A stretch of DNA of 64,000 nucleotides, from NCBI RefSeq assembly GCF_044704955.1, contig NC_092000.1, forward strand, positions 11,098,001 to 11,162,000. Reading direction: 5' to 3'. The DNA is from Pristiophorus japonicus. Lineage: Eukaryota. A program made the position numbers and the translations under genes. Below are positions 16,211 through 54,964 of the stretch, in pieces (position 1 is the first letter of the stretch; each line of letters begins with the position of its first letter). The notes beneath the pieces are model-generated. The model did no database searches. It had not been told where the DNA came from and saw only the letters and a program-made list of their open reading frames with translations.

Positions 16211-16273
16211 CTAGGCTGTCGTTGGATTATAGCTTTTGACTCTGTAAACGTTTTCGTAAACGGCCTCACTCGC
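16211..16273 (-). CDS. IgSF receptor exon 9: ASEAVYENVYRVKSYNPTTA-stop
   Basis: Acceptor cttttcatttctcttttaag. The exon runs to 16205 with donor AAG|gtaagc. YENV motif in phase 0; TAG at 16213-16211. Confidence 0.72.
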   Translation of the reverse strand, partial: ASEAVYENVYRVKSYNPTTA

Positions 16274-24270: not shown

Positions 24271-24339
24271 CTTTGCTGGGGCGCTGGGTTCCTTCGGCTC
24301 GTCTCTTTTCAGAGTGTCGTAGACCACAGCAGAGGGCAC
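24271..24339 (-). CDS. IgSF receptor exon 8 (paralog of exon 7): VPSAVVYDTLKRDEPKEPSAPAK, ITIM VVYDTL
   Basis: Acceptor cttttctcccttttaag, donor AAG|gtaact; 69 nt, phase 0-0; matches ITIM consensus (I/V/L/S)xYxx(L/V). Confidence 0.78.
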
Positions 24340-25793: not shown

Positions 25794-25871
25794 CTTTGCC
25801 GGGGCGCTGGGTTCCTTCGGCTCGTCTCTTTTCAGAGTGTCGTAGACATCAGCGGTGGGGCGTGAGGGCAC
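25794..25871 (-). CDS. IgSF receptor exon 7: VPSRPTADVYDTLKRDEPKEPSAPAK
   Basis: Acceptor cttttctcctttttaag, donor AAG|gtaact; 78 nt, phase 0-0; YxxL motif. Confidence 0.8.
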
Positions 25872-28833: not shown

Positions 28834-28887
28834 CATGTAAACCGGTTCCTCCTCCGGCCGCCCTGTCACTCTGCACTTCCTTACGAT
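28834..28887 (-). CDS. IgSF receptor exon 6: juxtamembrane IVRKCRVTGRPEEEPVYM
   Basis: Acceptor ctccctctttcag, donor ATG|gtgagt; 54 nt, phase 0-0. Supplies the basic stop-transfer RKCR directly after the TM. Confidence 0.85.
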
Positions 28888-31229
28888 CTGAAAGAGGGAG
28901 GCAACTAAGATTAACAGATTTGTCCGACCACCGCTTGATTGTAAATACAAAGGGCAACAGGCTGGAGATGCACGGCAGGTCGGGCAGCATTGGTGGAGCA
29001 ACAGAAGTCTGTTGGTCGAGGTTGCAGCTCTCGAGGACACCTGAGCAAGGGTCTGAGGACCTCAAAGCGCCGAAATGGCCGATTCAGTTTCTCCGTGGCT
29101 GCTGCCTGACCCGCCCGGTGTGGCCAGCCGTTGCCGGTCGAAGATTTCCAGCACCAGCGGCAATATGATTTTGCGCGGCTAACTGCACCATTGGCTGGCG
29201 GGCTTCACCGAAAAAGATGTGGAACAAGTGGAGCTCCAAAATAAAAGTCAACAAGGTACTTACTGTTATGTATGTAACTATGTAATACTTACCACCAGAG
29301 GGCGCGACTGTTGGAGTCCTAATGGTCACCTGCACACATGTGCAGGGCCAGTATAAAAGGTTGGCTGCCATGTTGTTTAGACTCTGGAGTTGTAATAAAG
29401 ATGACTAAGGTCACACTAACTTTAGCTCACAATACTCAGCCTTATGGAGTTCTTCTATACATAATAATTGGCGACGAGTAACAGAATACGAACCTTCACA
29501 CAACCATGGCTGCCATTGGACTATTAGAGAGATTCGTAGAGGGTGATGATTGGGAAGCCTTCGTCGAGCATCTCGACCAATACTTCGTGGCCAACGAGCT
29601 GGAAGAAGTCACTAATGTGGTCAAGCGCTGGGCGGTTCTTCTCACCGTCTGTGGGCCTAAAATATACGGCCTCATCAAGAATCTGCTCGCACCCCGACAA
29701 AACCAATGGAGAAGGAATATACAGAGTTGTGCATGGAGGTTCGGGACCACCTCAAGCCGAAGGAGAGTATCCTCATGGCCAGATATCGTTTTTACACGCA
29801 CCATCGCTCCGGGGGGCCAGGGCGTGGCGGATTATGTCGCCGTCCTGAGACTTCTCGCGGGACCTTTCGATTTTGGCGCTGCGTTGGGGCAAATGCTGCG
29901 AGACTTTTTCGTGCTGGGCATCAGCCACGAGGTCATTCTTCAAAAGCTGCTGGCTGCCGAAACCCTAGACCTGAACAGGGCCATCGCGATCGCCCAGGCA
30001 TGCATGGCCACGGATGATAACACCAAACAGATATCTTCTCAACATCGATGCTCACCGGCAAGTACTGTGCATGAAATGATTTCGCGAGCAGGCCGAACTG
30101 CATATGGCAGGGCCTATACGTCTGTGGCTGCAAGACCTGTGATACTCAGAGTCCGCCATCGGGAGTGAATGTGAATCCATTAACACCGTGTTGGCTCTGC
30201 GGGGGTAATCATCGGGCCCATCAATGTCGATTCAAGCACTACGTGTGCAAAGGCTGCACAACAATGGGGCACCTCCAGCGAATGTGCAAACGTGCTGCGA
30301 CACACCACGTGGCAGAGGATGATCGATCCGGCGCGGATCACGCAGCACAGGCAACTCAACCTGAGGAAGAAATGTATGGGGTGCATACCTTCACCACCAA
30401 GAGCCCTCCTATAATGCTGAAAGTCAAATTAAATGGAGTTCCAGTATCCATGGAGTTGGACACGGGTGCGAGTCAGTCAATAATGAGCCAGAAGGCTTTC
30501 GAGAAACTGTGGGGCAATAAGGCACAAAGGCCTAAACTGAGCCCGATTAATGCAAAGCTGCGTACCTACACCAAAGAGCTCATACCAGTCATTGTAAGTG
30601 AGGCAGTGAAGGTATCATATGATGGGGCTGTGCATGATCTATCATTGTGGATTGTTCCAGGCAATGGCCCAAAGCTGTTTGGCAGAAGCTGGCTGGAAAA
30701 GATTAGAATGACATCAAAGCACTATCTTCAGTGGATGACGCCTCGTGTGCTCAAGTGCTGAGCAAGTTTCCCTCGCTATTCGAACCAGGCATCGGCAACT
30801 TCACAGGCGCCAAGTTACAGATCCATCTAGGCCCTGAAGCACGGCCCATCCATCACAAGGCTCGGGCGGTTCCATACATGATGAGGGAGAGAGTCGAGAT
30901 CAAACTGGACAGACTCCAACGCGAAGGAATCATATCGCCAGTCAAGTTCAACGAGTGGGCCAGTTCAATTGTTCCGGTGTTGAAAAGCGATGGCACAGTC
31001 AGAATCTGCGGAGACTACAAGGTAATGATTAACCGAGTCTCACTACAGGACCAGTACTCGCTGCCCAAGGCAGATGACCTGTTTGCAACGTTAGCGGGGG
31101 GGGGGGGGGGGGGGGGGCGGCGGGCGGAAGTCGTTCACCAAGTTGGACCTAACCTCCGCCTACCTGACACAGGAGCTGGCTAAATCTTCGAAAAGACTGA
31201 CGTGCATCAGCACACACAAAGGACTGTTC

Positions 31230-34200
31230 ATCTGACCTAGATACATTTTAAAAAGAGGCAGCTCGTGCAGAGCACGGAATGCAACAGCATAGAGTGGCAT
31301 TTGTGAGTTTGGTAAGTGGGTGAGTTTTAAGGGTTATTCTCGTTAAACCATTTGGAGGCTGGAGTAAATTGTTAGTGGCAATTGCCAGTAGCTTCTAAGT
31401 AAGTAGCAGTTTAATTTAAAGGGGAAAAGTTAAATAGTTGGAAATCTTTCAGGTTTAGGCAGAGAAAACGAAGGTAACTCTCCAGTAGGAGGTAATTAGC
31501 AGCTAGTTAAAACCAGTTCTGTAAACGACTGACCAGTAGTGAGTCATCTGACCTAGATACAGTTTAAAAAGAGGCAGCTCGTGCAGAGCACGGAGTGCAG
31601 CAGCATAGAGTGGCATTTGAGAGTTTGGTAAGTGGGTGAGTTCGGGCGGCAGGTGCTGTTTTGTCTTGTTTTTCCTACCAGTGCTGACACTAGAGCAGCT
31701 AATAAGGAGTGCGAGAGTAGGAGACGGAGGCCCAGAGACCAGCCCAACCAGTTGCAGACAAAGAGAGAGGGATGCGAAATCGAGAGGTGACGTCACAGCC
31801 AAGATGGTAAGGGGTTAGCTGTTCGACTGGTAAGCATAACTCTCTTTTAGACTGACTTTTAGATTGGTTTAATTGGCAGCCAACCAATAAGTAGCTGTTT
31901 GGTGTTTAAGTAAATTTTAGTAAGTAAATTAATTTAAGGGTTAAGTCATGGCAGGAGAGCTCGGACCCGTGTTATGCTCCTCCTGTGCTATGTGGGAAGT
32001 CAGGGACGCTTCCAGTGTCCCTGACTACTATGTGTGCGGGAAGTGTGTCCAGCTGCAGCTCCTGACAGACCGCATGACGGCACTGGAGCTACGGATGGAC
32101 TCACTCTGGAGCATGCGCGATGCTGAGAATGTTGTGGATAGCACATTTAGTGAGTTGGTCACACTGCAGGTAAGGGTTAGGACAAATAGTGAATGGGTGA
32201 CCAAGAGACAAGGCAAGAGCAGGAAGGTAGTGCAGGAGTCCCCTGCGGTCATCTCCCTCCAAAACAGATATACCGTTTTGGATACTGTTGGGGTAGATGA
32301 CTTACCGGGGAAGGCACCAGCAGCCATGGCACCGTGGGTGGCTCTGCTGCACAGAAAGGTGGGAAAAAGAGTTGGAGAGCTATAGTGATAGGGGACTCTA
32401 TTGTAAGGGGAATAGATAGGAGTTTCTGCGGCCGCAACCGAGACTCCAGGATGGTATGTTGCCTCCCTGATGTCTCGGAGCGGCTGCAGAGCATTCTGGA
32501 GAGGGAGGGTAAACAGCCAGTTGTCGTGGTACATGTAGGTACCAACGATATAGGTAAGAAGCGGGAAGAGGTCCTACAAGCTGAATTTAGGGAGCTAGGA
32601 GTTAAATTAAAATGTAGGACCTCAAAGGTAGTAATCTCTGGATTGCTACCAGTGCCACGTGCTAATCAGAGTAGAGGGAGCAGGATAGTTAGAATAAATA
32701 CGTGGCTTGAGCAGTGGTGCAAGAGGGAGGGATTCAAATTCCTGGGACATTGGAAGCAGTTCTGGGGGAAGTGGGACCTGTACAAAAGGGACGGTCTGCA
32801 CTTGGGCAGGACTGGAACTGATGTCCTAGGGATAACATTTGCTAATGCAGTTCGGGAGTGTTTAAACTAATATGGCAGGGGGATGGGAACCTATGTAGCG
32901 AGATAGGGCGAAGTAATATGGAGTCAGAAACAGATGGTAGAAAGGTAAAAAGCAATAGTGGAAGGCCGAGTAAACAAAGGCAAGAAACAAAAAGGGCCAC
33001 ACTACATCATAATTCTAAAAGGACAAAGGGTGTTAAAAAACAAGCCTGAAGGCTTTGTGTCTTAATGCAAGGAGTATCCGTAATAAGGTGGATGAATTAA
33101 CTGTGCAAATAGATGTTAACAGATATGATGTGATTGGGATTACAGAGACGTGGCTCCATGATGATCAGGGCTGGGAACTCAACATCCATGGGTATTCAAT
33201 GTTCAGGGAGGATAGAATAAAAGGAAAAGGAGGTGGGGTAGCATTGCTGGTTAAAGAGGAGATTGATGCAATAGTTAGGAAGGACATTAGCTTGGATGAT
33301 GTGGAATCTATATGGGTAGAGCTGCAGAACACCAAAGGGCAAAAAACGTTAGTGGGAGTTGTGTACAGACCTCCAAACAGTAGTAGTGATGTTGGGGAGG
33401 GCATCAAACAGGAAATTAGGGGTGCATGCAATAAAGGTGCAGCAGTTATCATGGGTGACTTTAATATGCATATAGATTGGGCTAACCAAACTGGAAGCAA
33501 TACGGTGGAGGAGGATTTCCTGGAGTGCATAAGGGATGGTTTTCTAGACCAATATGTCGAGGAACCAACTAGAGGGGAGGCCATCTTAGACTGGGTGTTG
33601 TGTAATGAGAGAGGATTAATTAGCAATCTCATTGTGCAAGGCCCCTTGGGTAAGAGTGACCATAATATGGTGGAATTCTATATTAGGATGGTGAATGAAA
33701 CAGTTAATTCAGAGACCATGGTCCAGAACTTAAAGAAGGGTAACTTTGAAGGTATGAGGCGTGAATTGGCTAGGATAGATTGGCGAATGATACTTAAGGG
33801 GTTAACCGTGGATGGGCAATGGCAGACATTTAGAGATCGCATGGATGAAATACAACAATTGTACATTCCTGTCTGGCGTAAAAATAAAAAAGGGAAGGTG
33901 GCTCAACCGTGGCTATCAAGGGAAATCAGGGATAGTATTAAAGCCAAGGAAGTGGCATACAAATTGGCCAGAAATAGCAGTGAACCCGGGGACTGGGAGA
34001 AATTTAGAACTCAGCAGAGGAGGACAAAGGGTTTGATTAGGGCAGGGAAAATAGAGTACGAGAGGAAGCTTGCAGGGAACATTAAGACGGACTGCAAAAG
34101 TTTCTATAGATATGTAAAGAAAAAAAGGTTAGTAAAGACAAACATAGGTCCCCTGCAGTCAGAATCAGCGGAATTCATAACGGGGAACAAAGAAATGGCA

Positions 34201-36968
34201 GACCAATTGAACAAGTACTTTAGTTCGGTATTCACTAAGGAGGACACAAACAACCTTCAGGATATAAAAGGGGTCAGAGGGTCTAGTAAGAAGGAGGAAC
34301 TGAGGGAAATCCTTATTAGTCAGGAAATTGTGTTGGGGAAATTGATGGGATTGAAGGCCGATAAATCCCCAGGGCCTGATGGACTGCATCCCAGAGTACT
34401 TAAGGAGGTGGTCTTGGAAATAGCGAATGCATTGCCAGTCATTTTCCAACATTCCATAGACTCTGGATCAGTTCCTATGGAGTGGAGATTCGCCAATGTA
34501 ACCCCACTTTTTAAAAAAAGGAGGCAGAGAGAACACAGGGAATTATAGACCGGTCAGCCTGACATCGATAGTGGGTAAAATGATGGAATCAATTATTAAG
34601 GATGTCATAGCAGCGCATTTGGAAAGAGGTGACATGATAGGTCCAAGTCAGCATGGATTTTTGAAAGGGAAATCATGCTTGACAAATCTTCTGGAATTTT
34701 TTGAGGATGTTTCCAGTAGAGTGGACAAGGGAGAACCAGTTGAACCAGAAGGCTTTCGACAAGGTCCCACACAAGAGATTAATGTGCAAAGTTAAAGCAC
34801 ATGGGATTGGGGGTAGTGTGCTGACATGGATTGAGAACTGGTTGTCAGACAGGAAGCAAAGAGTAGGAGTAAATGGGTACTTTTCAGAATGGCAGGCAGT
34901 GACTAGTGGGGTACCGCAAGGTTCTGTGCTGGGGCCCCAGCTGTTTATATTGTACATTAATGATTTAGAAACATAGAAACATAGAAAATAGGTGCAGGAG
35001 TAGGCCATTCGGCCCTTCGAGCCTGCACCGCCATTCAATGAGTTCATGGCTGAACATGCTGAACATTAGACGAGGGGATTAAATGTAGTATCTCCAAATT
35101 TGCGGATGACACTAAGTTGGGTGGCAGCGTGAGCTGTGAGGAGGATGCTATGAGGCTGCAGAGAGACTTGGATAGGTTAGGTGAGTGGGCAAATGCATGG
35201 CAGATGAAGTTATGGGCCCAAGTTTCCACACGATAAAAAACGGGCGCCCCTCCGAGCTGGGCGCCCGTTTTCCGCGCCTAAAACGGCGCCTAAAAACAAA
35301 ATCGCGATTCTGGAGCGTTCTGCAGCTCCTTGTCTGCTTGGCACGGCGCCCAGGGGGGGCGGAGCCTGCACTCGCGCCGATTTTGTAAGTGGGAGGGGGC
35401 GGGTACTATTTAAATTAGTTTTTTTCCAGCCGGCAACGCTGCGCGTACGCGTTGGAGCGTTCGCGCAGTGTGAAAAAAACATTGGCACTCGGCCAATTTT
35501 GTAGTTCTTTGTAGCTGTTTAATTTTTGAATTTTTTTTTAATAAAAGCACATTGCCATCAGCACATCAGCACTTGCAGCCTTCTCACTGTCTCCTTCCCC
35601 TGCCCCCCCGCAGGAAGAACGGGCGCCTCCCCCCCCCCCTGCGGGAAAGAACGGGCTCCTCCTCCCCCCCCCCCCCGCAGGAAAGAATGGGCGCCTCCTC
35701 TTCCCCCCCTACCCCCGCGGGAAGAATGGGCGCCTCCCCCCCCGCGGGAAAGAACGGGCGCCTCCCCCCCCCCCGCGGGAAAGAATGGGCGCCTCCTCTT
35801 CCCCCCCCACCCCCGCGGGAAGAATGGGCGCCTCCTCTTCCCCCCCCACCCCCGCGGGAAGAATGGGCGCCTCCCCCCCCGCGGGAAAGAACGGACGCCT
35901 CTTCCCCCCCCCCCGCGGGAAGAACGGGCGCCTCCTCCCCCCCCCCCCCCGCGGAGTACGTTTTCACTGTGGAAACTTTGAAATCAGGCGTCAGTGGCCG
36001 GACACGCCCTCTTTTGAAGAAAAAATTCTGTTCCAAAGTAGAACTGTTCTACCTGACTAGAACTGCAGAAAAAAAAATGTGGAGAATTGTGATTTCTAAG
36101 ATAGTCCGTTCTCCACCAGTTGCTCCTAAAAATCAGGCGCAAATCATGTGGAAACTTGGGCCCATAATGTGGATAAATGTGAGGTTATCCACTTTGGTGG
36201 TAAAAAGAGAGAGACGGACTATTATCTGAATGGTGACAGATTAGGAAAAGGAGAGGTGCAACGAGACCTGGGTGTCATGGTACATCAGTCATTGAAGGTT
36301 GGCATGCAGGTACAGTAGGCGGTTAAGAAAGCAAATGGCATGTTGGCCTTCATAGCGAGAGGATTTGAGTACAGGGGATTTGAGTACAGGGCTTTGGTGA
36401 GGCCACACCTGGAGTATTGTGTACAGTTTTGGTCTCCTAACTTGAGGAAGGACATTCTTGCTATTGAGGGAGTGCAGCAAAGGTTCACCAGACTGATTCC
36501 CAGGATGGCGGGACTGACATATCAAGAAAGACTGGATCAACTGAGCTTGTATTCACTGGAGTTCAGAAGAATGAGAGGGGATCTCATAGAAACGTTCAAA
36601 ATTCTGATGGGTTTAGACAAGTTAGATGCAGGAAGAATGTTCCCAATGTTGGGGAAGTCCAGAACCAGGGGTCACAGTCTAAGGATAAGGGGTAAGCCAT
36701 TTAGGACCGAGATGAGGAGAAACTTCTTCACCCAGAGAATGGTGAACCTGTGGAATTCTCTAGCACAGAAAGTTGTTGAGGCCAATTCACTAAATATATT
36801 CAAAAAGGAGTTAGATGTAGTCCTTACTACTAGGGGGATCAAGGGGTATGGCGAGAAAGCAGGAATGGGGTACTGAAGTTGCATGTTCAGCCATGAACTC
36901 ATTGAATGGCGGTGCAGGCTCGAAGGGCCGAATGGCCTACTCCTGCACCTATTTTCTATGTTTCTATA
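31230..36968 (+). mobile_element. near full-length CR1 LINE nested in the Gypsy A RT
   Basis: 5'UTR; ORF1 with CxxC..CxxC and SGNH esterase (GDS, VGTND, DGLH; 31948-32870, frameshifted); ORF2 APE endonuclease (NARS, ITETW, GDFN, SDH) plus RT; (TTTCTATG)n tail. Confidence 0.95.
35213..36164. mobile_element. MITE with 22-bp TIRs and an internal G/C minisatellite
   Basis: tgggcccaagtttccacacgat ... atcatgtggaaacttgggccca, flanked by TA on both sides; tandem ccccgcgggaagaatgggcgcctc units at ~35600-35955. Confidence 0.88.
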
Positions 36969-39509
36969 TAGCACAGGTGCCCTTTCGCGATTCGCTCGGC
37001 TGCAGCCATTTTCCAGAGAAACATGGAGAGTTTGCTGAAATCTGTTCTGCACACCATTGTGTTTCAAGATGACATCCTGATCACTGGTCGTGACACCATC
37101 GAACATCTGTACAACCTGGAAGAGGTTCTAAGTCACCTAGACAGAGTGGGACTCAGGCTGAAACGCTCCAAGTGTGTTTTCCTGACGGCAGAATTTTTGG
37201 GGAGAAAGATTGCAGCAGACGGCATCAGGCCCATGGACTCAAAGACAGAGGCCATCAAGAATGTACCCAAACCACAGAATGTGATGGTGCTGCGTTCTTT
37301 CCTGGGACTCCTCAACTATTTCGGTAACTTTCTACCCGGGTTGAGCACGTTGTTCGAGCCTTTGCACATGTTGCTATGCAAGGGTGACAGCTGAGTTTGG
37401 GGCAAATCTCAAGACACAGCCTTTGAGAAGGTCAGGAATGTTGAAATAAGTTAATTTTACACTATGACTCATGGAAACATTTAGTGCGAGCTTGTGACGC
37501 CTCATCGTACAGGGTCAGCTGTGTGTTACAGCAAGCCAATGTATTGGGCAACCTTCAACTGGTTGCATACGTATCTAGAAGTCTGTCTAAGGCTGAGAGA
37601 GCCTATAGTATGGTCGAGAAAGAGGCATTAAGAAAATGCACCAATACCTATTTGGACTTCGGTTTGAGCTTGAAACTGACCACAAGCCGCTCATTTCGCT
37701 GTTTTCAGAGAGCAAAGATATAAATACCAATGTTTCATCCGCATCCAAAGATGGGCACTAACATCATCTGCTTATGACTGTTATCCGCCACAGACCAGGC
37801 ACTAAAAACTGTGTCAATGCTCTCAGCTGGCTACCATTACCCACCACTGGAGTTGAAATGGCGCAGCCCGCAGACTTGCTACTGGTCATGGATGCTTTTG
37901 AGAGCGAGGGGTCACCCGTCACAGCTCGCCAGATCAGGATCTGGACCAGCCAGGATCCTGCGCTATCATTAGTAAAGAGTTGCGTCCTAATTGGGAACTG
38001 GTCGGCCGTTTCCCAGGGAAATGCAAGATGAAATTAAGCCATTTCACTGACGCAAAGATGAAATGTCCATCCAGTTAAATTGTCTCTTGTGGGGTAATCG
38101 CGTGGTTTTTCTAAAAAAAGGCAGGGAAACGTTTATACGCAACCCACTCAGTACCCACCCAGGCATTGTCATTGAAGGAAATTGCCAGGTCGCATGTTTG
38201 GTGGCCCGGCATTGACTCGGACTTAGAATCATGTGTACATCAGTGCAACACTTGATCGCAACTGAGCAATGCACCAAGGGAGGCTCCACTGAGTCTGTGG
38301 TCATGGCCCTCCAAATCATGGTCCAGGATCCACATAGATTTTGCCGGCCCATTTCTAGGAAAGATGGTTTTAGTAGTAGTGGACGCTTACTCCAAATGGA
38401 TTGAATGCGTAATCTGTCATCCAGCACATCCACAGCCGCCATTGAAAGCCTCTGGGCCATGATCGCCACCCATGGCTTGCCCGAAGTCCTTGTCAGCGAC
38501 AATGGCCCGTGTTTCACCAGCTCGGAATTCAACGAGTTTCTGACCAGCAATGGCATCAAGCATGTCAGGTCTTCTTGGTTTAAGCCCGCGTCTAACGGTC
38601 AAGCAGAGTAGGCAGTCCAAACCATCAAGCAGAGCATGAAACGCGTGACGGACGGTTCCCTGCAGACCCGCTTGTCTCGCATTCTGCTCAGTTACCGGAC
38701 GTGACCCCACTCACTCACCAGGGTTCCCCCGGCAGAATTGTTAATGAAGAGAGCCCTCAAACCAGGCTCTCCCTAGTCCACCGGGATCTTAATGATCCCG
38801 TAGAAACCCAGCGACACCGGCAGAACATGTACCACGATCGCGCGGCTGTTTCATGTGACATTGATGATAACGACCCTGTGATTGTCCTGAATTACGGTCA
38901 TGGTCCCAAGTCGGTTGCTGGCACAGTTTTGGCCAAGGAAGGGAATAGGTTGTTTATAATCAAACTGTTAAATGGCCAAACGTGCAGAAAGCATTTAGAT
39001 CAGACCAAATTGTGATTTACCGACAACCAGGAATGACTTGAAGAGGACATCACCATCGGCGATCCACCAACACACACCCAACCAACAATCGACCTCGCTG
39101 TCAATCACGAGGATGAACCCACCGTTGCTGACAGTCTGGTCAGACCAGTCACGGTGCAGTGCAGCAATGGTCCGGCCAACTCACACATGCCAGGGTTTGA
39201 ACTTAGACGATCAACCAGGGAGCGGAGGGCTCCTGATTGCCTCAACTTGTAAATAACTTGTACCGAAGACTTTTGGGGGGGGGGGGGCGGGTGGAGTGAT
39301 GTTATGTATGTAACTATGTAACACTTGCCACCAGAGGGGGTGACTGTTGGAGTCCTAATGATCGCATGCACACACGTGCAGGGCCAGTATAAAAGGTTGG
39401 CTGCCATGTTGTTTAGGCACTCTGGAGTTGTAATAAAGAAGACGAAGGTCACACTAAGTTTAGCTCACAGTACTCAGCCTCGTGGAGTTCTTCTACACGT
39501 AATACTTAC

Positions 39510-39601
39510 AACATATGTGACGATGGATGTCACAATGACCAGGAAAAGCACAGCACTGACACTGATCACAATGACCATCAACTGTTGGTCGGTAATCTCA
39601 T
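39510..39601 (-). CDS. IgSF receptor exon 5: transmembrane (Y)EITDQQLMVIVISVSAVLFLVIVTSIVTYV
   Basis: Acceptor cctgtttgtgttacag, donor GTT|gtaagt; 92 nt, phase 1-0. About 24 uncharged, mostly hydrophobic residues. Not in the ORF track. Confidence 0.88.
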
Positions 39602-43833: not shown

Positions 43834-44112
43834 AGTTTATCTGCGGGTCAATCACAGTGACTATCAGCATGGACTGCCTCTTTCCCAGCTTGTTGCTCGC
43901 GATGCAGCGGTAGACACCCTGGTCGTTGGATGAGATGTTATGCACCCTGATCCTCAGGTGTCTCGTTTTTCTGACCAGCAAGACCATGCTATTTCGGTAC
44001 CAACTCATTTCGGCTGTAGGGTTGCTACTGGCCAAGCATGTCAACTCGAGCAGCTCACCCGTCGTCTTCACAATATTTCCCTCAGGTTCCACCCGAAGAT
44101 TTACAGGCCCAT
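43834..44112 (-). CDS. IgSF receptor exon 4: C2/I-set Ig domain
   Basis: Acceptor tttcttttaacag gives a YGPVNL linker. Canonical GELLELTC..SNP..SWYRN..DQGVYRCIASNKLG. The 3' boundary uses a weak T|gtttgt donor (279 nt, phase 1) and is less certain. Confidence 0.85.
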
Positions 44113-44134: not shown

Positions 44135-46470
44135 AGCAGAGCCTCCATTTCAAAATTCTCAGCCTTGTTTTCAAATTCCTCCATATCCCTAAGCTCCTCC
44201 AGCTCCCCACCCCCCACCCACTACCCCCCTCCCCTCCAGCTTCCCCTCCCCTCCCACCCGAGATGTCTGCGCTCCTCTAATTCTGCCCTCTTGAGCATCC
44301 CTGATTATAATCGCTCAACCATCGGTGGCCGTGCCTTCAGCTGCCTCGGCCCCAAGCTCTGGAACTCCCTCCCTAATCCTCTCCGCCTCTCTTTCCTCCT
44401 TTAAGACACTCCTTAAAACCTCCCTCTTTGATCAAGTTTTTGGTCACTTGCCATAATTTCTCCTTATGGGGCTTGGTGTCAACTTTATTTTTTTGTCTTA
44501 AAACACTCCTGTGAAGCGCCTTGGGACATTTTACTATGTTAAAGGCGCTATATAGATACAAGTTGTTGTTATTTATATAGCACCTTTCACGACCTCAGGA
44601 CGTCCCAAAGCGCTTTACAGCCAATGAACTACTTTTGGAGTGCAGTCACTGTTGTAATGTGGGAAATGCGGCAGCCAATTTGCGCACAGCAAGCTCCCAC
44701 AAACAGCAACGTGACAAATGACCAGATAATCTGTTCTTTTGTCACTTTGAGTGAGGGATAAATATTGGCCAGGACACAAGAACATAAGAACATAAGAACA
44801 TAACATAAGAAGGCCATCTAGCCCCTCGAGCCTGCTCCGCCATTCAACAAGATCATGGCTGATCTGGCCGTGGACTCAGCTCCACTTACCTGCCCGCTCC
44901 CTGTAACCTTTAATTCCCTTATTGGTTAAAAATCTATCTATCTGTGATTTGAATACATTCAATGAGCTAGCCTCAACTGCTTCCTTGGGCAGAGAATTCC
45001 ACAGATTCACAACTCTCTGGGAGAAGAAATTCCTTCTCAACTCGGTTTTAAATTGGCTCCCCCGTATTTTGAGGCTGTGCCCCCTAGTTCTAGTCTCCCC
45101 GACCAGTGGAAACAACCTCTTTGCCTCTATCTTGACTATCCCTTTCATTATTTTAAATGTTTCTATAAGATCACCCCTCATCCTTCTGAACTCCAACGAG
45201 TAAAGACCCAGTCTACTCAATCTATCATAAGGTAACCCTCTAATCTCTGAAATCAGCCTAGTGAATCGTCTCTGTACCCCTTCCACCAGGGACTAGTGCC
45301 ATGGGATTTTTTTATGGCCACCTGAAAGAGCAGATGTGGCCTCGGTTTAACATCTCGTCCGAAAGAAAAGAGTCTCTGAAAAAACACGAACAAAAAAATC
45401 ATTTTAAACTCCCCCCAGATTAAAACTTGCCTGAAATAGTAGATATAAGGAACATACTCTCGCCTAGTGGGCAGAAGCATGGTACTAAGTCAAACAGACC
45501 AGAAGATCCTAGTCTGTCTGATACCTGCCGTGTGTCGAGTTAGCCAATCCCAGCTAGGGCAGCAGTAAGGGTGCCTTCATGGATTTGGCCTCAGTGCCCT
45601 TTAGCTCAGAAATAGACAAAATCAGCCACGGTTCCTCATCACCTTCCAGCAATCCCTGCTGCCACAGTGAGTGTTTGAGGACATGAGGAGAGGAGCAGGC
45701 TTGGCTATGGTTGGATAGCCTGCTGATGCTCACTGTTCAGGGTCACTCGTGGAGAATAGCCACTCTGCCAAGATCATAGAATTTCATTGAGGGGATTGAC
45801 TTAGGAGGAAAGGTTGAGTAGGTTGGGCCTCTACTCATTGGAATTCAGAAGAATGAAAGGTGAGCTTATCGAAACACATAAGATTATGAGGGGGCTTCAC
45901 AAGGTGGATGCAGAGAGGATATTTCCACTGATGAGGGAGACAAGAACTAGAGGGCATAATCTTAGAATAAAGGGACCACCCATTTAAAACTGAGATGAGG
46001 AGAAATTTCCTCTGAGGGTTGTGGATCTGTGGAATTCGCTGCCTCAGAGGGCTGTGGAAGCTGGGACATTGAATAAATTTAAGACAGAAATAGACAGTTT
46101 CTTAAACGATAAGAGAATAAGGGGTTATGGGGAGTGGGCAGGGAAGTGGAGCTGAGTCCATGATCAGATCAGCCATGATCGTATTACATGGCGGAGCAGG
46201 CTTGAGGGGCCGTATGGCCTACTCCTGCTCCTATTTCTTGTGTTATGTTCTTAGTAGCACAGAAGGAGGCCATTCGGGCTCATCATGCCTGTGCCGGCTC
46301 TTTGGTAGAGCTGTCGAATTGGTCCCACTTCTCCCGCTGATCTTTCCCCATAGCCCTGCAAATGTCTCCTATTCGAGTAGCTGTCCAATTTCCTTTTGAC
46401 AGTTACTATTGAATCTGCTCCCACCGCCCTTTCAGGCTGCGCGTTCCAGATCACAACAACTCGCTGTATT
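44135..46470. mobile_element. intronic cluster: L2-like tail, SINE, CR1 3' ends in both orientations
   Basis: GGRAFSCLGPKLWNSLP; CR1 ends at 44775-45290 (-), 45800-46250 (+), 46250-46470 (-). Confidence 0.78.
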
Positions 46471-46592
46471 AAGAAGAAACTAGAAAATACTTGGTGGACG
46501 ACCAGGTCCAGCCCAACAAGGGGTTAGCACCTTCAGGGAAGGAGGAAGAGAAAGTATTTTGTTGCTGGATGTTCTGGCTGTCCAATACTTAC

Positions 46593-46892
46593 ATAAAACA
46601 TGGAGTCTTTGAGACCACGATGAGTTCATAGATTTGTGAGTGATCCGGCAAGTAATTGTTTTACCGTGGTCGTTTATCTGCGGTACAAATGAAACCGTGG
46701 ACATAGCTTTGAAGGTTCCATTGACATACATGGTGATAGATAACCCAACTCTTTCTCGTAGCGGAATCCCATCCTTCAGCCAATGCATCAGAATCTCTTT
46801 TGGATAAAATCCAATCGCACTCAAACTCAAAGTTGCAGCCTTCTTCACCTCCAACTGGGGCACATTCAAAATAGCCTGAGCAATTGGCACAG
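46593..46892 (-). CDS. IgSF receptor exon 3: C1-set-like Ig domain
   Basis: Acceptor tttattctttaag, donor T|gtaagt; 300 nt, phase 1-1. Motifs ATLSLSAIGFYPKEILMHWLKDG, NGTF, DHGKTITCRITHKSM. Confidence 0.9.
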
Positions 46893-46957
46893 CTTAAAGA
46901 ATAAATGAGAAAAGTATCGTTGAAATATTTTGCCACAACAGGAGGAATAAGTCGTCA

Positions 46958-48580
46958 GACATAGAAACATAGAAACAGAAAATAGGTGCAGGAGTAGGAG
47001 CCTGCATTGCCATTCAATATGATCATGGCCGATCATGCAACCTCAGTACCCCACCCCTGCCTTCTCTCCATATCCCCGATCCCTTTCGCCGTAAAGGCCT
47101 TATCTAACTCCCTTTGGAATATGTCAGAGCTGGAATAACAACTTTATGTGGCAGAGAATTCCACAGGCTCACAACTCTGGGTGAAAAAGTTTCTCCTCAT
47201 CTCAGTCCTCTATGGCTTACCCCTTATCCTTAGACTGTGACCTTTGGTTCTGGACTTCCCCAACATCGGGAACATTCTTCCTGCATCTAACCTGTCCAGT
47301 CCTGTCAGAATTGTATAAGTTTCTATGAGATCCCCTAAATTCCAGTGAGTATAAGCCTAGTCGATCCAGTCTCTCCTCAAATGTCAGTCCTGCCATCCCA
47401 GGAATCAGTCTGGTGAACCTTCGCTGTAATCCTTATTAGGCTGGACCTGGTCGTCCACCAACTTCTATATTTGTAATTAATTGCGTACATGGTTTGTGCT
47501 CAAGTACATTCCTGCTTCAAAAAAGTTGAGAACAAATATTTGTTCTTTTGACTTCCAGTCGCTCTCCTCTCTCATCCTTACCTGTGCTGAAGGCATTCAC
47601 TCATGTCAGGCAATTGTATGAAGACTGCCATGGCCAGGGTGTCCACCGGTATGCTCGCGACCTTCCGCGAGAGATGGGCACCGGAGGGACTGGAGTGCAT
47701 CATTTCAACAAGGAACAGAATTTTAATTTGATCTGGTTTGAAAAAGGTTCCCTTTAATTTCCAATTATTAAATTGTGGTTTATGGTGCCCTCAAAAAAAA
47801 AGGGCCACTTGATTTAAAATTGATTTAAAGTTACTTTTCAAAATAGTTGAAGACTGCCGCCATGTCTCTCATCCTCATAAGCATGCAAAGGACTAGACAT
47901 CAAGTGGCTGTAGGGTACTCAACCACAGCCATGAAGGTAGCAGGCCAGGACGATAAGGTGGTTAAGAAGGCATATGGGATACTTGTCTTTATTAACCGAG
48001 GCAAGGAGGTTATGCTTGAACTGTATAAAACACTAGTTAGGCCACAGCTAGAGTAATGAGTGCAGTTCTGGTCACCACATTACAGGAACAATGTGATTAC
48101 ACTAGAGAGGGTACAGAGGAGATTTACGAGGATGTTGCCTGGACTGGATTTTAGCAATGAGGCAAGATTGGATAGACTGGGTTTGTTTTCTTTGGAACAG
48201 AGGAGGCTGAGGGGAAACCTTATTGAGGTGTATAAAATTATGAGGATCCTAGATAGAGTGGATAGGAAGGACCTATTTTCCTTAGCAGAGGGGTCAGAAA
48301 CCCGGAGCCATAGATTTAAAGTAATTGGTAGAATAATTAGAGGGGATTTATGGGGAAATGTCTTCACCCAGAGGGTGGTGGGGGTCTGGAACTCACTGCC
48401 TGAAAGGGTGGTAGAGACAGAAACCCTCACCACATTTAAAAAGTACTTGGATGTGCACCTGAAGTGCCGTAACCTACAGGGCTACGGACCAACAGTTGGA
48501 AAGTGGGCTTAGGCTGGAGAGCTCTTTGTTGGCCGGCACGGACACAATGGGCCGAAATGGCCTCCTTCCGTGCTGTAAAA
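46958..48580. mobile_element. CR1 (-, 46958-47428), Tx1 3' tip (+, ~47630-47848), CR1 (+, 47930-48580)
   Basis: Family-typical 3' sequences and ORF 48060-48512. Confidence 0.8.
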
Positions 48581-49529
48581 CAAGGCACAGGAGTGTTCTC
48601 AAACTAAATTTGACACCGAGTCACATGAGATAGTAGGACAGATGACCAAAAGTTTCGTCAGAGAGGTAAATTTTAAGAAGGGTCTTAAAAGAAGAGAGAG
48701 AGAGAGAGAGAAAGAGAGAGATCCAGAGTTTCAGAGTTTAAGTTCTAGGCAGCTGAAGGCATGGCCGCCAATGGTGGAACGATGAAAATTGGGGATGTGC
48801 AAGAGGCCAGAATTGAAGGAGCGCAGAAATCTGAGGTTGTAGTGCTGGAGGAGGTTACAGAGACAGGGAGGGGTAACCAGGAGTCATCTGCCATTTCCCC
48901 CTCCCAGTCAGAGATGGCAAGGTACCTATTGTCTCCGCTTCCAACTGGTAACAACTCATTCAGGACAGGCCAGAGATCAACAGCTGGACTTTCCTAGTCT
49001 GTATCATTTACTCACTATGTATACTCGCTGAACCATCGGGGAGCCATTCTCCGCCTCCCCCCTGCCCCACTCTCTTAGCACCCGCAGTGTTCCCTAGGTT
49101 GAAAGGGCAATCAGCTGGCCCACCCCTAGGAGCCTGATATTTGTGGGAGCTTGCTGTGTGCAAATTGGCTGCCGTATTTCCCACATTACAACAGTGACTA
49201 CACTTTAAAAAGTACTTCATTGGCTGTAAAGCGCTTTGGGATGTCCTGAGGTCATGAAAGGCGCTATATAAATGCAAGTCCTTTTTTTTTTTCAAGGTTA
49301 AATACTCTTCTTGGGATCACATGGGTCTCCACACAGCCTCAGTACAGCATCAGATAGTCCATTTCCTCACTGAGTCGTTGGGGAGGAACCCTGAGGTGTT
49401 TCCACTGCAATAAGCACTAGACCAAGAGCCCGATCTCAACCAGTGTTGAACCCCAGCCATGACTGTCAGACAATCACCAACATCCAATCACTCTAAAGCT
49501 AAGTTACCCGCCTAGTCAGGAAAAAGCTA

Positions 49530-50143
49530 TATGGACCATATACAGTAGACACCTCAAAGCGCTGGAGAAGTACCACCAGCGCTGCCTCCACAAGATCCTG
49601 CAAATGCACTGGGAGGATAGACACACCAATGTCAGTGTTCTCGCTCAGGCCAACATCCCCTGCATTGAAGCACTGACCACGCTTGACCAGCTCCGTGGGG
49701 CAGGCCACATCGTCTGCATGCCCAATACGAGACTCCCAGAGCAAGCGCTCTACGCGGAACTCCTACACAGCAAGCGAGCCCCAGGTGGGCAGAGGAAACG
49801 TTTCAAGGACACCGTCAAAGCCTCCTTGGTAAAGTGCAACATCCCCAATGGCACCTGGGAGTCCCTGGTCAAAGACCGCCCTAAGTGGAGGAAGAGCATT
49901 CAGGAGGGCGCTGAGCACCTCGAATCTCGTCACCGAGACCATTAAGAAGTCAAGCGCAGACAGCTGAAGGAGCATGCAGCAAACCAGGCTCCCCACCCAC
50001 CCTTTCCCTCAATGACTGTCTGTCTGTCCCACCTGTGACAGAAACTGTAATTCCTGTATTGGACTGTACAGCCACCTGAGAACTCACTTTGAGTGGAAGC
50101 AAGTCTTCTCCGATTTTGAGGGACTGCCTATGATGATGATGAT
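49530..50143 (+). mobile_element. RTE LINE 3' end
   Basis: WEDRHTNVSVL..AGH..RLPE; (ATG)n tail. Confidence 0.88.
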
Positions 50144-50339
50144 GGTGGTATAGCCGACTTGTGATAAGAGACCAAGAGCCCAATCTCAACCATGAACACC
50201 AGCCATGACTGTTTGACAATCACTAATATCCAATCACTCTAGGGTAAGTTATCCGCTTTATTTCTAACTTGGCCAGGCCCTCCCCCATCCAATGGCACAC
50301 CCTCTACAAGGGCTTGGACTTCAGCAGACCAGCACCCAC

Positions 50340-50723
50340 CTTTGAATAAGAGCTGTGTAACATCAGGCACAAATTCAACTGCTTCCTTTACACTAGAACT
50401 TGGAACACTGTAATAGAATCCAGCATCTGTCACTTGCAATCCTTTGATGTGAAGCTGTGCTGTGAACGAGGGGCTCGTAACACTGAATAAAAAACGATCA
50501 CCTTGCAGAAATCTACACAAGTTCTTTTGGTGTTCGCGGTGTTTGTAATAGCACCAACGCACAATCAGCAGTTCATCCGTCTTCCGGCTGGAGTTATCCA
50601 GCTTATCGCTCAGCCCCAAAGGTGCCGCCAAGCTGAATTTTGCATACTTGCTGGTGATTATGACGTCTTCCTTCACTACGCCGTAGATTGTCTTTATGCG
50701 CTGCTCCTCGCCTCTACTTGTAT
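50340..50723 (-). CDS. IgSF receptor exon 2: V-type Ig domain lacking both canonical Cys
   Basis: Acceptor aacttgttttccag, donor G|gtgggt; 384 nt, phase 1-1, open. V-set motifs: IYGVVKEDVIIT[S]KY, VRW, DRF, AQLHIKGLQVTDAGFYY[S], TQLLFK. Confidence 0.88.
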
Positions 50724-50949
50724 CTGGAAAACAAGTTAAAATGCACAAGGGAATGAAATGGGCATCAGCGCCAACTGCCTGCGAATGGTTAAGAAACTCG
50801 CTCGAGAAAGACAGGACCTAAACGGTCACGCGGCCATAATCAGTGACCTCAGCATTGCAGCACAACAACAGCAACTTGTATTTATATAGCGCCTGTAACG
50901 TAGATCTGATCTGTGGTAGTCTTGATACCAACTTAGTGAGGACTTGATA

Positions 50950-52860
50950 CCAACTTAGTGGATGAATATAAACCCCTTTGTGTGTGTTGAAAGTCAGATA
51001 CTGCTGACTTTCCTTATCAATGTGGAATTTAGCACAGGCGTGGGAGAGATCCAGTTTTGTGAAGACTTTGGTTCCCGCTAGTTCTACATACAGGTCCTGT
51101 GATGCCGGTCAAGGGTACTGTACATCATCAAATGCTCGAGTCAGGGTAATTTTATAACCCCCACAAAGCCATACCGTTTTGTCGGCCTTCGGAACTACAA
51201 CTAACGGGGTGGCCCAGTCACTCCTATCCGTCTTCACCAAAACTCTGTTTTTCTCCAACTTATCAAGCTCTCGCTCTACCTGCGATTTTAATGCTTTTGG
51301 TACCGGCCTTGGTCTACAAAAAATGGGTCTGACATCCAACTTAATCCAAATTTGTGCATTATATCCCTTGATGCCCTCGTATCAGTCCTCAAACTTGTTA
51401 GTATATTTCTCCAGCAGAGTATCTTGCCGAGACTTAACCATTTCTGTACTACAGATGCTGTACCAATCCAAACAAAGCACTCTTAGCTATCTTTGCCCAT
51501 AAGTGTTGGCCAATTGACGTATTTCGCTACAATAATAATAAGTAATCTTGCTTGTTGCCCCTGGTATTGTACGACACACCCCATTTGTCCAAGCTTCTGC
51601 AGTTTTTCCCCTGAATATGTTTTCAGCTTCGCTGAGCTTGCCTTTAGTGGCATGCCCCTGAAATTCTTGTAATACACATCTTGACTCATTATTGAGCAAT
51701 CAGCCGCTATATCTATTGTCATATCAATCCATCGATTATTATTCAGTGCTAACGTTCTGAAATCCTGACTGAATGAATGTATTGCCTTGCCCTTCACTGT
51801 ATATACACCAAAACCTACACTGCCTTGATAAAGTGCAACACATCCCCACTGCCACCTGGGATCCCTGGCTAAAGACCGCCCTAAGTGGAGGAAGTGCATC
51901 CGGGAGGGCGCTGAGCATCTCGAGTATCATCGCCGAGAGCATGCAGAAATCAAGTGCAGGCAGCGGAAGGAGCATGGGGCAAACCAGTCCCACCCTCCCT
52001 TTCCCTCAACAACTGTCTGTCCCACCTGTGACAGGGACTGTGGTTCTTGTATTGGACTGTTCAGCCACCAAAGGACTCATTTTAAGAGTGGAAGCAAGTG
52101 TTCCTCGATTCCGAGGGACTTCCTATGATGATGACATTGTTCTGATCGCTTTCCACCCAGTGAAGTCTTTGATTATCGTTGGGGCTGCCCTTGGATTTAC
52201 ATACGGCTACAATGTGTCCCCTTACTTGACACCGGTAGCATCTTTCCCACTTGAACCAACACAGTTGTGTGGTATGGTTGCCATTTCACATACAATATTT
52301 TGGTTTCATAACTCTCCCTCCGACTGGGCTCACTATCTTCTGTGTTTGTACAGCCCTGTACAATTTTTTTCTGCCATCTTCATGGGAGGTGGCTATGTTG
52401 CAAGCTCTCTCAAAAGAGAGAGATCATCCATACTTAACAATTATGACTGGATGCGTTCATCCCTTAGTCCACACACAAATTAATCTCAAAGAGCCCTGTT
52501 TAGGAATCCTCCAAAATTGCAGTGTAGAGACAATTTTCTTATGGCAATAATATATTCACTGATGGTTTCATCACGCATTTGGTTTCTCATTGCAAACGTA
52601 TAGTGCTCTGCTATTTCGTAAAGCTGTGGATCAAAATGATTGTCCAATATCTATAGCATGGCTGTGAATGAAGCATTCTTAACCTTTCTCGGGGGTAACA
52701 AATTCATTAAGATGTTATAATTCTCTGCTCCAACCATGACTGACAAAATATCTTTCATCTTCTCCTGAACTACTTGATTCCTTGATTGCGATTTTGCCAT
52801 CCTGCTGTGACTTCATTGACATTAGCTCTAAAAAAAATATTGCAATCTTTCCCTGAAGGA
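50950..52860 (-). mobile_element. old Gypsy gag-pro-RT remnant with an RTE insertion (51820-52134, +)
   Basis: PRPVPKALK..WATPLVVVPKAD..CGGYK; LKTYSGE; no LTRs seen. Confidence 0.8.
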
Positions 52861-54545: not shown

Positions 54546-54964
54546 TGATGCACGAGAGGGAAAGAGTAAAAACGAAAGTTAAAGTGTACCTGTAAAACAA
54601 AGGCCAGTGAGAGAAAAGAGGAAAACCAACAAGGAGAGACCTGGACGATTCATGTTGCTCTGCAGGCTTCTGCCCTTCTACAAAGTGACTGTGTGTAATA
54701 CTCCTTAACAGGAAGAGAGACCCATATGATGGTGCAATTTTACTGTCCTTCTTCCCTTGTGCAATAGGAAATGAATGTGTTATACAGTCAGACCATGTTC
54801 CTTCATTTCCCACCATCTGTACAGTTTTTAAATGCAATTGGAATGTGTCTCATTTCCGACAGCCACTGAAATCTGACTTTTTTTCATCCTCCCCAACGAA
54901 CTATGGTGGAACGATGGAGCAGCCAGCCACACCGCCAGTGATAGGTGGACAACGCCATCACTTA

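What the first reader, a model, noticed from the sequence alone, without database searches (positions are those of the whole stretch)
50340..50723. V domain with both canonical cysteines replaced by serine, plus an alternative Cys pair
Seen: B-strand VIIT[S]KY uses AGC and F-strand DAGFYY[S] uses AGT, each one T>A change from TGC/TGT. The C-strand Trp and the DxGxYY motif are retained. A non-canonical pair remains in WC-x11-C. Known: V domains without the B-F disulfide occur in the CD2 and CEACAM families, and a C-C' disulfide occurs in CD300/TREM/pIgR-type domains. Inference: paired loss with an open frame and intact splice sites suggests selection and a relocated disulfide rather than decay.
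Basis: partly seen in the sequence, partly recalled or inferred. Interest (0 to 1): 0.78.

Follow-up and report, generated by a model that had tools for sequence, protein, structure and literature searches.

The report
Sawshark V domain with moved cysteines
An expressed Japanese sawshark immune-type receptor gene has an antibody-like outer domain that lost both of its usual core cysteines and gained two new ones side by side on a surface hairpin, a likely natural case of a moved disulphide bond that still needs a structure or a biochemical test.

Summary
Window 50340-50723 (minus strand) is a phase 1-1 exon with consensus splice sites. It encodes a V-type Ig domain with AGC Ser in VIITSKY, AGT Ser in GFYYS, the strand-C Trp and WC-x11-C.

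It is exon 2 of a nine-exon gene for a V-C1-C2-TM receptor with a tyrosine-motif tail. RefSeq predicts it in Pristiophorus japonicus as "Siglec-8".

cDNA-like contigs from two samples join this exon exactly to the C1 exon; the DNA run does not.

All four orthologues found (Heptranchias, Heterodontus, Cetorhinus, Scyliorhinus) keep Cys at both Ser positions and have Q/Q/L/L and Q/Q/H/Q where the sawshark has its two Cys. So the loss and the gain are both derived in the sawshark lineage; the pair does not "remain".

The sawshark V domain has not evolved faster than its sevengill counterpart (19:19, 22:17, 15:16).

Alignment to a lambda VL, and a two-residue deletion at the hairpin tip in catshark, place Cys57 directly opposite Cys69 on the C-C' hairpin.

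Verdict: a real, probably functional variant with a plausible but untested relocated disulphide. Moderate interest.

The parts
54590..54653 (-). Leader exon, coding part: MNRPGLSLLVFLFSLTGLCFT plus the first base of the next codon; donor GTACAC
   Evidence: tblastn of P0001 against the window; sequence and donor read
50340..50723 (-). V-domain exon (the finding): 384 nt, phase 1-1
   Evidence: It is 100% identical to residues 23-149 of P0001 and P0008. cDNA-like contigs cover it: X5 record 16 and X6 record 17
50650..50652 (-). Ser24 codon AGC at the strand-B cysteine position
   Evidence: Cys in 4 of 4 orthologues
50551..50553 (-). Cys57 codon TGC, the residue after the strand-C Trp56
   Evidence: orthologues have Q, Q, L, L here
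50515..50517 (-). Cys69 codon TGT in strand C', inferred to lie opposite Cys57
   Evidence: orthologues have Q, Q, H, Q; strand register
50407..50409 (-). Ser105 codon AGT at the strand-F cysteine position (DxGxYY-S)
   Evidence: Cys in 4 of 4 orthologues; aligned to YYC of antibody V domains
46593..46892 (-). C1-set exon, 300 nt, phase 1-1. Present in isoform X1 (P0008) and skipped in X2 (P0001). Its strand-B Cys is replaced by Leu
   Evidence: The joint 50340 to 46892 is seen in X5 and X6
43834..44112 (-). Third Ig exon (I-set/C2-like, both Cys present), 279 nt
39510..39601 (-). Transmembrane exon
28834..28887 (-). Cytoplasmic exon 1 (IVRKCRVTGRPEEEPVYM)
25794..25871 (-). Cytoplasmic exon 2 (first VYDTL motif)
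24271..24339 (-). Cytoplasmic exon 3 (second VYDTL motif, a duplicate of exon 2)
16211..16273 (-). Last coding exon (ASEAVYENVYRVKSYNPTTA plus the stop codon)

Best explanation
The exon encodes the N-terminal V-type Ig domain of a type I membrane receptor. The receptor has a V domain, a C1-set domain, an I/C2-type domain, a transmembrane segment and a tail with three or four conserved tyrosine motifs. The searches run here found the family in sharks only. In the lineage leading to the Japanese sawshark, the buried B-F disulphide was replaced by a Ser-Ser pair. Two cysteines were gained on the outer face of the GFCC' sheet. One follows the strand-C Trp (Cys57). The other is the residue directly across from it in strand C' (Cys69). 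The most likely mechanism is that these two form a short-range disulphide that staples the C-C' hairpin. This would work like the second disulphide of CD300/pIgR-type V domains, but would have arisen independently. Together with a gain of hydrophobic residues, it would partly make up for the lost core bond. Shown here: the sequence states, their derived status, expression, splicing, and the lack of rate acceleration. Inferred: the cross-strand position of the two Cys, the bond itself, and any stabilising role.
For: Sequence and splice sites. Identity with the RefSeq/UniRef models of Pristiophorus japonicus. Transcripts: the joint 46892<->50340 (skips 3447 nt, GT..AG on the minus strand) occurs in 1 contig each of X5 and X6 and in 0 contigs of the DNA run X1. 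The 1019-nt X6 contig runs V, then C1, then onward. Derived state: 4 of 4 orthologues have Cys at positions 24 and 105, and 0 of 4 have Cys at 57 or 69. No acceleration: Tajima counts of sawshark-unique versus sevengill-unique changes in the V domain are 19:19, 22:17 and 15:16 with three outgroups. Register: HMMER aligns the family profile to a lambda VL (8vur_L) with W56=W35, position 69=T46 and position 70=V47. The family is two residues longer in the C-C' hairpin. The catshark orthologue lacks residues 62-63, and three orthologues have P-E-D/N or L-N-D at 62-64. This marks the hairpin tip at 63, the midpoint of 57 and 69. The IgStrand paper states that the GFCC' anchors, including the strand-C Trp, form a run of backbone-backbone contacts (passages). 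Precedent: CD300 V domains have a YWCR motif in strand C and two disulphides (PMC3031540, passages). Extra hydrophobics: the sawshark has 9 polar-to-hydrophobic switches against 2 to 4 in the others.
Against: The pairing of Cys57 with Cys69 therefore rests on an alignment-based register. The spacing (11) is longer than the roughly 7 I recall for CD300/pIgR (recalled, not tested). The sawshark V domain shows more polarity switches than any orthologue: 14 against 7, 4, 2 and 5. One of them puts Arg at position 70, where the others have Ile or Val next to the core Trp. Its Pfam V-set score falls to 14.4 bits, against 39.5-42.4 bits in the orthologues. All 3 differences in the X6 contig are nonsynonymous. 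These facts also fit relaxed constraint. Extra cysteines occur elsewhere in this family (1 in basking shark, 2 in catshark), so new Cys are not rare here. The C1 domain of the same protein lives without its disulphide in 4 of 5 species, so this protein may need no replacement bond.
Confidence: 0.55

Rival explanations
1. The domain folds with no intradomain disulphide, as CD2 and CEACAM N domains do. Cys57 and Cys69 are not bonded to each other. They are free, or they make intermolecular bonds, for example a covalent homodimer through the GFCC' face, which is the usual contact face of V domains of adhesion-type receptors.
For: This family tolerates loss of an Ig disulphide. The C1 domain lacks its strand-B Cys in 4 of 5 species while the strand-F Cys is invariant, so an unpaired Cys is already carried. 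Both new Cys are inferred to lie on the outer face of the GFCC' sheet. The IgStrand paper notes CD2 as an exception to the B-F bond (passages).
Against: If the register holds, two exposed thiols directly opposite each other on a hairpin would be expected to oxidise to each other in the secretory pathway (inference). Two new Cys landing on neighbouring cross-strand sites is unlikely if they have no relation to each other.
Confidence: 0.2
2. Relaxed constraint: the V domain is decaying in the sawshark after losing its disulphide. It is still transcribed and spliced, and the two Cys are incidental.
For: Polarity switches number 14 in the sawshark against 2 to 7 in the others, including Ile/Val70 to Arg. 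The Pfam V-set score is 14.4 bits, below the 26-bit cut-off. In the X6 contig, 3 of 3 differences are nonsynonymous (R55H and K66N in V, and one R>Q in C1) and none is synonymous, over about 695 nt. The third Ig domain of the same gene is accelerated in the sawshark: 16:3, 17:2 and 11:5. Isoforms that skip an Ig exon exist (P0001).
Against: The V domain is not accelerated (19:19, 22:17, 15:16). There is no stop or frameshift in any of the nine exons, and all splice sites read are consensus. Both cDNA-like contigs that span the junction include the V exon. Ser is the isosteric replacement at both positions. The polarity switches are mostly gains of hydrophobic residues (9 gains against 3 losses other than the two Cys), which does not look like random decay.
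Confidence: 0.15
3. Assembly or sequencing error, or a pseudo-exon that is not used.
For: None found.
Against: Contigs of X5, X6 and X1 cover the whole exon with no other letter at any of the four codons. X7 covers three of the four codons. X5 and X6 are from another study than the likely source sample and carry the spliced joint.
Confidence: 0.02

Closest known systems
CD300 / pIgR / NKp44-type V domains (two-disulphide V domains with a WC motif in strand C)
   Same: A Cys directly after the strand-C Trp, and a partner Cys a short way on in the next strand. CD300 is described as having a YWCR motif and two disulphides (PMC3031540, passages). CD300a/f, PIGR and NKp44 form one structural subgroup (PMC3057841, one passage).
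   Different: Those domains keep the canonical B-F bond as well; this one has lost it. The motif here is RWCY, without the Arg. The spacing is 11, against about 7 (recalled). No CD300, pIgR, TREM or NKp44 chain is among the PDB sequence hits (0 of 22; 0 of the 60 listed of 238). The four orthologues lack both Cys, so the likeness is convergent.
CD2 / CEACAM N-terminal V domains without the B-F disulphide
   Same: A V-type first domain with no B-F disulphide, on a membrane receptor whose membrane-proximal Ig domain is CEACAM-like. The best PDB hit of the family profile is CEA, E 5.4e-38, through the LxVLYGP-type third domain. CD2 is named as an exception to the B-F bond in the IgStrand paper (passages).
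   Different: In those families the loss is family-wide and old, and no replacement bond exists (recalled). Here 4 of 5 species keep the bond, and the one that lost it has a new Cys pair. A C1-set second domain is present here.
Siglecs (the name RefSeq gives this gene and two orthologues)
   Same: An Ig-only ectodomain, an I/C2-type membrane-proximal domain, and a tyrosine-motif tail. CD22 and MAG are among the PDB profile hits over C1 plus D3.
   Different: There is no Arg in strand F, no Cys in strands B or E, and the second domain is C1-set. The Siglec hallmarks used for this comparison are recalled. The name looks like an automatic best-hit label.
Nectin / CADM (Necl) family (the name RefSeq gives three orthologues)
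   Same: An ectodomain of three Ig domains, V then C1-like then I/C2. Nectin-1 is hit over C1 plus D3 at E 2.4e-14.
   Different: The tails end in different tyrosine-motif sequences and share no common C-terminal motif. The V domain is closest by sequence to lambda light-chain V and shark VNAR domains, not to nectin V domains.
Antibody lambda V, shark VNAR and UrIg2 V-C1 (best sequence matches of the V-C1 part)
   Same: The D-E-F region (DRF...TAQLHIKGL...DAGFYxC) and the V-C1 order. Hits are 8vur_L at E 3.1e-10 and VNARs at about 1e-5, and UrIg2 (9dmx) at E 7.9e-19 for V end plus C1.
   Different: There is no J-like motif in strand G. The stretch from C' to D is 8 residues shorter than in lambda V, so C'' is probably absent. 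The stretch from strand B to the Trp is long, 32 residues. UrIg and UrIg2 have a VJ exon and several C1 domains (PMC12227049, abstract and section 7).

Membership tests
V-set Ig domain (Pfam PF07686) | Match to the V-set profile at or above the gathering score (26 bits) | tested here: met
   The exon alone scores 14.4 bits, E 0.045, which is below the cut-off. The whole protein P0008 scores 28.9 bits, with no single stretch passing on its own. All 4 orthologues score 39.5-42.4 bits over profile positions 4-106. Membership of the sawshark domain therefore rests mainly on orthology.
V-set Ig domain (Pfam PF07686) | Cys(B)-Cys(F)-Trp(C) triad | tested here: not met
   Trp56 is present. Both Cys are replaced by Ser. 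The orthologues have the full triad.
CD300 / pIgR / NKp44-type V domain | YWCR-type motif in strand C | tested here: inconclusive
   The sequence is RWCY: W-C is present and the Arg is absent. The motif is as quoted in PMC3031540.
CD300 / pIgR / NKp44-type V domain | Two disulphides: the canonical B-F bond plus a second one | tested here: not met
   The canonical pair is absent; only two Cys exist in the domain.
CD300 / pIgR / NKp44-type V domain | Sequence relatedness to solved members | tested here: not met
   0 of 22 hits and 0 of the 60 listed of 238 hits are CD300, pIgR, TREM or NKp44 chains.
Siglec | Sialic-acid-binding Arg in strand F of the V domain (feature recalled) | tested here: not met
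   In all 5 species strand F reads DAGFY[YFS][SC] followed by non-Arg residues, except for an Arg two residues after the Cys in Heptranchias only. The sawshark has none.
Siglec | Intrasheet B-E disulphide and C2-set domains after the V domain (features recalled) | tested here: not met
   There is no Cys in strand E in any of the 5 species. The second domain is C1-set at 36.1 bits.
Nectin / CADM | Ectodomain of three Ig domains, V then C1-like then I/C2 | tested here: met
   Pfam finds V-set, C1-set/C2-set_2 and I-set/Ig_2 in that order.
Nectin / CADM | Conserved C-terminal adaptor-binding motif (feature recalled) | tested here: inconclusive
   The five tails end differently (…NPTTA, …YANI, …ITKDS, …TLQN, …IGKL) and share Tyr motifs instead. 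The family motif was not checked against a source.
CD2 / CEACAM-type disulphide-less V domain | Family-wide absence of the B-F disulphide | tested here: not met
   Only 1 of 5 species lacks it.

The most novel reading that the evidence does not exclude
This is a natural, complete relocation of the Ig-domain disulphide within one orthologous series. The buried B-F bond is replaced by Ser-Ser and a new surface C-C' hairpin bond takes over, helped by extra hydrophobic packing. It would be a V-set domain held by a C-C' bond alone, a state I could not find described. The bond would sit on the usual ligand-contact face, next to two polymorphic residues (R55H, K66N). It could therefore also act as a redox-sensitive switch of binding.
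Probability: 0.3. Interest if true: 0.6.

Novelty: new variant of a known kind. Interest (0 to 1): 0.42.

Why it matters
The B-F disulphide with its flanking Trp is the most conserved feature of Ig domains. Known exceptions either drop it entirely (CD2, CEACAM) or add a second bond beside it (CD300/pIgR). Here an orthologous series has four species with the canonical bond and one with both Cys lost and a new neighbouring pair gained. That gives a clean natural experiment on how a fold trades one stabilising bond for another. It also gives a template for designing V domains that do not depend on the buried bond. The finding also flags a shark V-C1-C2 receptor family that databases label inconsistently (Siglec-8, -12 and -14; CADM1 and CADM3). 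My searches did not find it described.

Tried and rejected
I fell back on the strand register from HMMER alignments and on indel and turn positions.

There was therefore no codon-level dN/dS, no check of the ancestral TGY codons and no synteny. I used protein-level relative-rate counts instead.

Closer relatives.
- The V exon alone found nothing (0 of 14 candidates).
- The V region of P0001 found only the two sawshark isoforms (2 of 88 candidates).
- The exhaustive representative search found 4 proteins at E <= 0.001: this gene, basking shark, sevengill shark, and a 3386-aa lamprey multi-Ig protein that I treated as generic.
- No ray, chimaera or second sawshark paralogue turned up. This is no proof of absence.

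CD300 membership was rejected on sequence. Siglec and CADM membership were rejected or left open (see the membership test). UrIg/UrIg2 was considered because 9dmx is a PDB hit. It was rejected because there is no J-like motif and the domain order differs.

Papers.
- Search listings only.
- Read: PMC12227049 abstract, outline and section 7; passages of PMC3031540, PMC11926128, PMC3057841 and PMC12051499.
- None describes this gene or a V domain with only a C-C' bond. The claim 'not in print' rests only and is weak.
- Supplementary files were not opened.

Earlier-finding look-ups gave context only.

Full report
What is there. The finding lies on the minus strand. The stretch 50723-50340 is a 384-nt exon with a good acceptor (TTGTTTTCCAG|AT) and donor (AAAG|GTGGGT), phase 1 at both ends as is usual for Ig-domain exons. 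Its 127 full codons contain VIITSKY with Ser24 = AGC and DAGFYYS with Ser105 = AGT. They also contain VRWCYYKHREHQKNLCRF, with Trp56, Cys57 (TGC) and Cys69 (TGT). There is no other Cys.

The gene. An exhaustive HMMER search of 1.84 billion representatives found 4 proteins at E <= 0.001. The best is 100% identical over all 127 residues. The source names show it to be 'sialic acid-binding Ig-like lectin 8 isoform X2' of Pristiophorus japonicus; isoform X1 (P0008, 460 aa) was found. tblastn plus reading of the splice sites places nine coding exons on the minus strand:
- leader, 54653-54590;
- V, 50723-50340;
- C1, 46892-46593;
- third Ig, 44112-43834;
- transmembrane, 39601-39510;
- three short cytoplasmic exons, 28887-28834, 25871-25794 and 24339-24271;
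- last exon, 16273-16211.
All splice sites read are consensus. The exon lengths sum to 1383 nt, which is 460 codons plus a stop. I summed the lengths only and made no joined sequence.

Domains. Pfam calls the second domain C1-set and the third I-set/Ig_2. The V exon alone reaches only 14.4 bits for V-set, below the 26-bit cut-off. The four orthologues reach 39.5-42.4 bits.

Is it used? The exon's words are held by four DNA-type runs of the probable source sample. They are also held by three small runs of another study (X5-X7, kind not on record). Laying their contigs on 46450-50850 shows a joint from 50340 to 46892 that skips 3447 nt with GT..AG ends on the minus strand. It occurs in one contig of X5 (depth 10.7) and one of X6 (depth 149.3), and in none of the DNA run X1. 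The 1019-nt X6 contig covers the V exon, then the C1 exon, and continues beyond. These are therefore cDNA-like contigs, and the exon is spliced as predicted in at least two samples.

The alignment runs 11 nt past the acceptor, to 50734. The end of the leader exon differs from the end of the intron by one base, so this overrun is an alignment effect. No other letter was read at any of the four critical codons. X7 does not cover Cys57.

The X6 contig differs from the window at three places, and all three are nonsynonymous: R55H and K66N in the V exon, and one R>Q in the C1 exon.

Are the serines at the canonical positions, and is the Cys pair old? A profile search found one protein each in Heptranchias perlo, Heterodontus francisci, Cetorhinus maximus and Scyliorhinus canicula. 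That is 6 proteins at E <= 1e-10 among 8000 scored candidates, two of them the sawshark isoforms. In alignments of the whole proteins and of the V domains alone, all four have Cys at position 24 (TITCK/TLTCK) and at position 105 (FYFC/FYSC). In the sevengill and horn sharks these are the only Cys of the domain. At position 57 they have Q, Q, L, L, and at position 69 Q, Q, H, Q. Given the usual shark tree (recalled), the loss of both canonical Cys and the gain of both new Cys are derived on the sawshark branch.

Decay or function? Tajima-type counts of changes unique to the sawshark versus unique to the sevengill shark in the V domain are 19:19, 22:17 and 15:16 with three outgroups. There is no acceleration. 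Against this, the sawshark has more polarity switches than any other species: 5 hydrophobic-to-polar and 9 polar-to-hydrophobic, against totals of 7, 4, 2 and 5. These include Arg70 where the others have Ile or Val. The small sample of variants is all nonsynonymous. I read the excess of hydrophobic gains as repacking after loss of the bond, but relaxed constraint is not excluded.

The indirect evidence is as follows.
- HMMER aligns the family profile to a lambda-6 VL (8vur_L, E 3.1e-10) with W56=W35 and positions 69, 70, 71 = T46, V47, I48. The family is two residues longer between the Trp and strand C', and eight residues shorter between C' and D, so C'' is probably missing.
- In VL domains the Trp and residue 47 are cross-strand neighbours, as are residues 36 and 46. 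This is recalled, but it agrees with the IgStrand statement that the GFCC' anchors, including the strand-C Trp, form a run of backbone contacts.
- If the two extra residues sit at the hairpin tip, position 56 pairs with 70 and position 57 pairs with 69.
- The tip position is supported by a two-residue deletion at 62-63 in the catshark and by turn-type P-E-D/N or L-N-D at 62-64 in three orthologues. Residue 63 is the midpoint of 57 and 69.
- The alternation of conserved hydrophobic residues puts 57 and 69 on the same outer face.
This makes a C-C' hairpin bond plausible, not shown.

Comparison with known kinds.
- CD300-type V domains carry a YWCR motif in strand C and two disulphides (PMC3031540, passages). 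They group structurally with pIgR and NKp44 (PMC3057841, one passage). The sawshark domain shares the W-C and a nearby partner. It lacks the canonical bond and the Arg, and has a longer spacing. No CD300, pIgR, TREM or NKp44 chain is among its PDB sequence hits. It works like that family at most, and is not a member.
- Ig domains without the B-F bond are known, CD2 for example (PMC12051499, passages). There the state is family-wide.
- The RefSeq names (Siglec-8, -12 and -14; CADM1 and CADM3-like) disagree with one another. The Siglec hallmarks (recalled) are absent.
- The family's third domain resembles CEACAM and contactin domains. Its V-C1 part resembles light chains, SIRP and UrIg2. It lacks the VJ exon and the multiple C1 domains of UrIg and UrIg2.

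Verdict. A derived, paired loss with a gain of two adjacent Cys is the best reading (confidence 0.55 that they bond to each other). The rivals are a disulphide-free domain with unpaired or intermolecular Cys (0.2), relaxed constraint (0.15) and artefact (0.02). It is a new variant of a known kind, of moderate interest. A structure or a disulphide map would settle it.

Noticed in passing
window 46593-46892 (-), C1 exon; alignment A2: The C1-set domain lacks its strand-B Cys in 4 of 5 species (the sawshark has Leu in ATLSLSAIGFYP; only Heptranchias has LSCK). The strand-F Cys (ITC) is invariant. Most members therefore carry an unpaired Cys in a disulphide-less C1 domain.
   Followed up: partly
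window 43834-44112 (-), third Ig exon: The third Ig domain, not the V domain, is the one accelerated in the sawshark. Changes unique to the sawshark versus the sevengill shark are 16:3, 17:2 and 11:5 with three outgroups.
   Followed up: no
window 50558, 50524 and 46757: The X6 contig differs from the window at three sites, all nonsynonymous: R55H and K66N on the C-C' hairpin beside the new Cys pair, and one R>Q in C1. There are no synonymous differences in about 695 nt. Whether this is an allele or another individual is not known.
   Followed up: partly
window 46593-46892 versus proteins P0001 and P0006: RefSeq models include isoforms that skip the C1 exon, in the sawshark (X2, 360 aa) and the basking shark (X3, 365 aa). 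The two junction-spanning contigs laid here both include C1. The skipping form could not be seen because the next exon lay outside the stretch.
   Followed up: partly
window 25794-25871 and 24271-24339 (-): Two near-identical cytoplasmic exons each encode VYDTLKRDEPKEPSAPAK. The four orthologues have a single copy of this motif.
   Followed up: partly
window 28887-39510 (-), intron after the TM exon: There is a 10.6-kb intron between the TM exon donor (GTAAGT at 39509-39504) and the next exon. It is full of retroelement-like open frames.
   Followed up: no
window 50821-51926 (-): Retrotransposon pol-like open frames start about 100 nt upstream of the V-exon acceptor, inside the 3.9-kb leader-V intron.
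   Followed up: no
V domain residues 24-56 (window about 50554-50652): The stretch from the strand-B Cys position to the strand-C Trp is unusually long: 32 residues, with an NSS glycosylation sequon. The length is shared by all five species. The C'-D segment is short and suggests that C'' is missing.
   Followed up: no
proteins P0002, P0005, P0006, P0004, P0007, P0009, P0010: Automatic names for what appears to be one orthologous gene disagree across species: Siglec-8, -12 and -14; CADM1-like; CADM3-like.
   Followed up: partly
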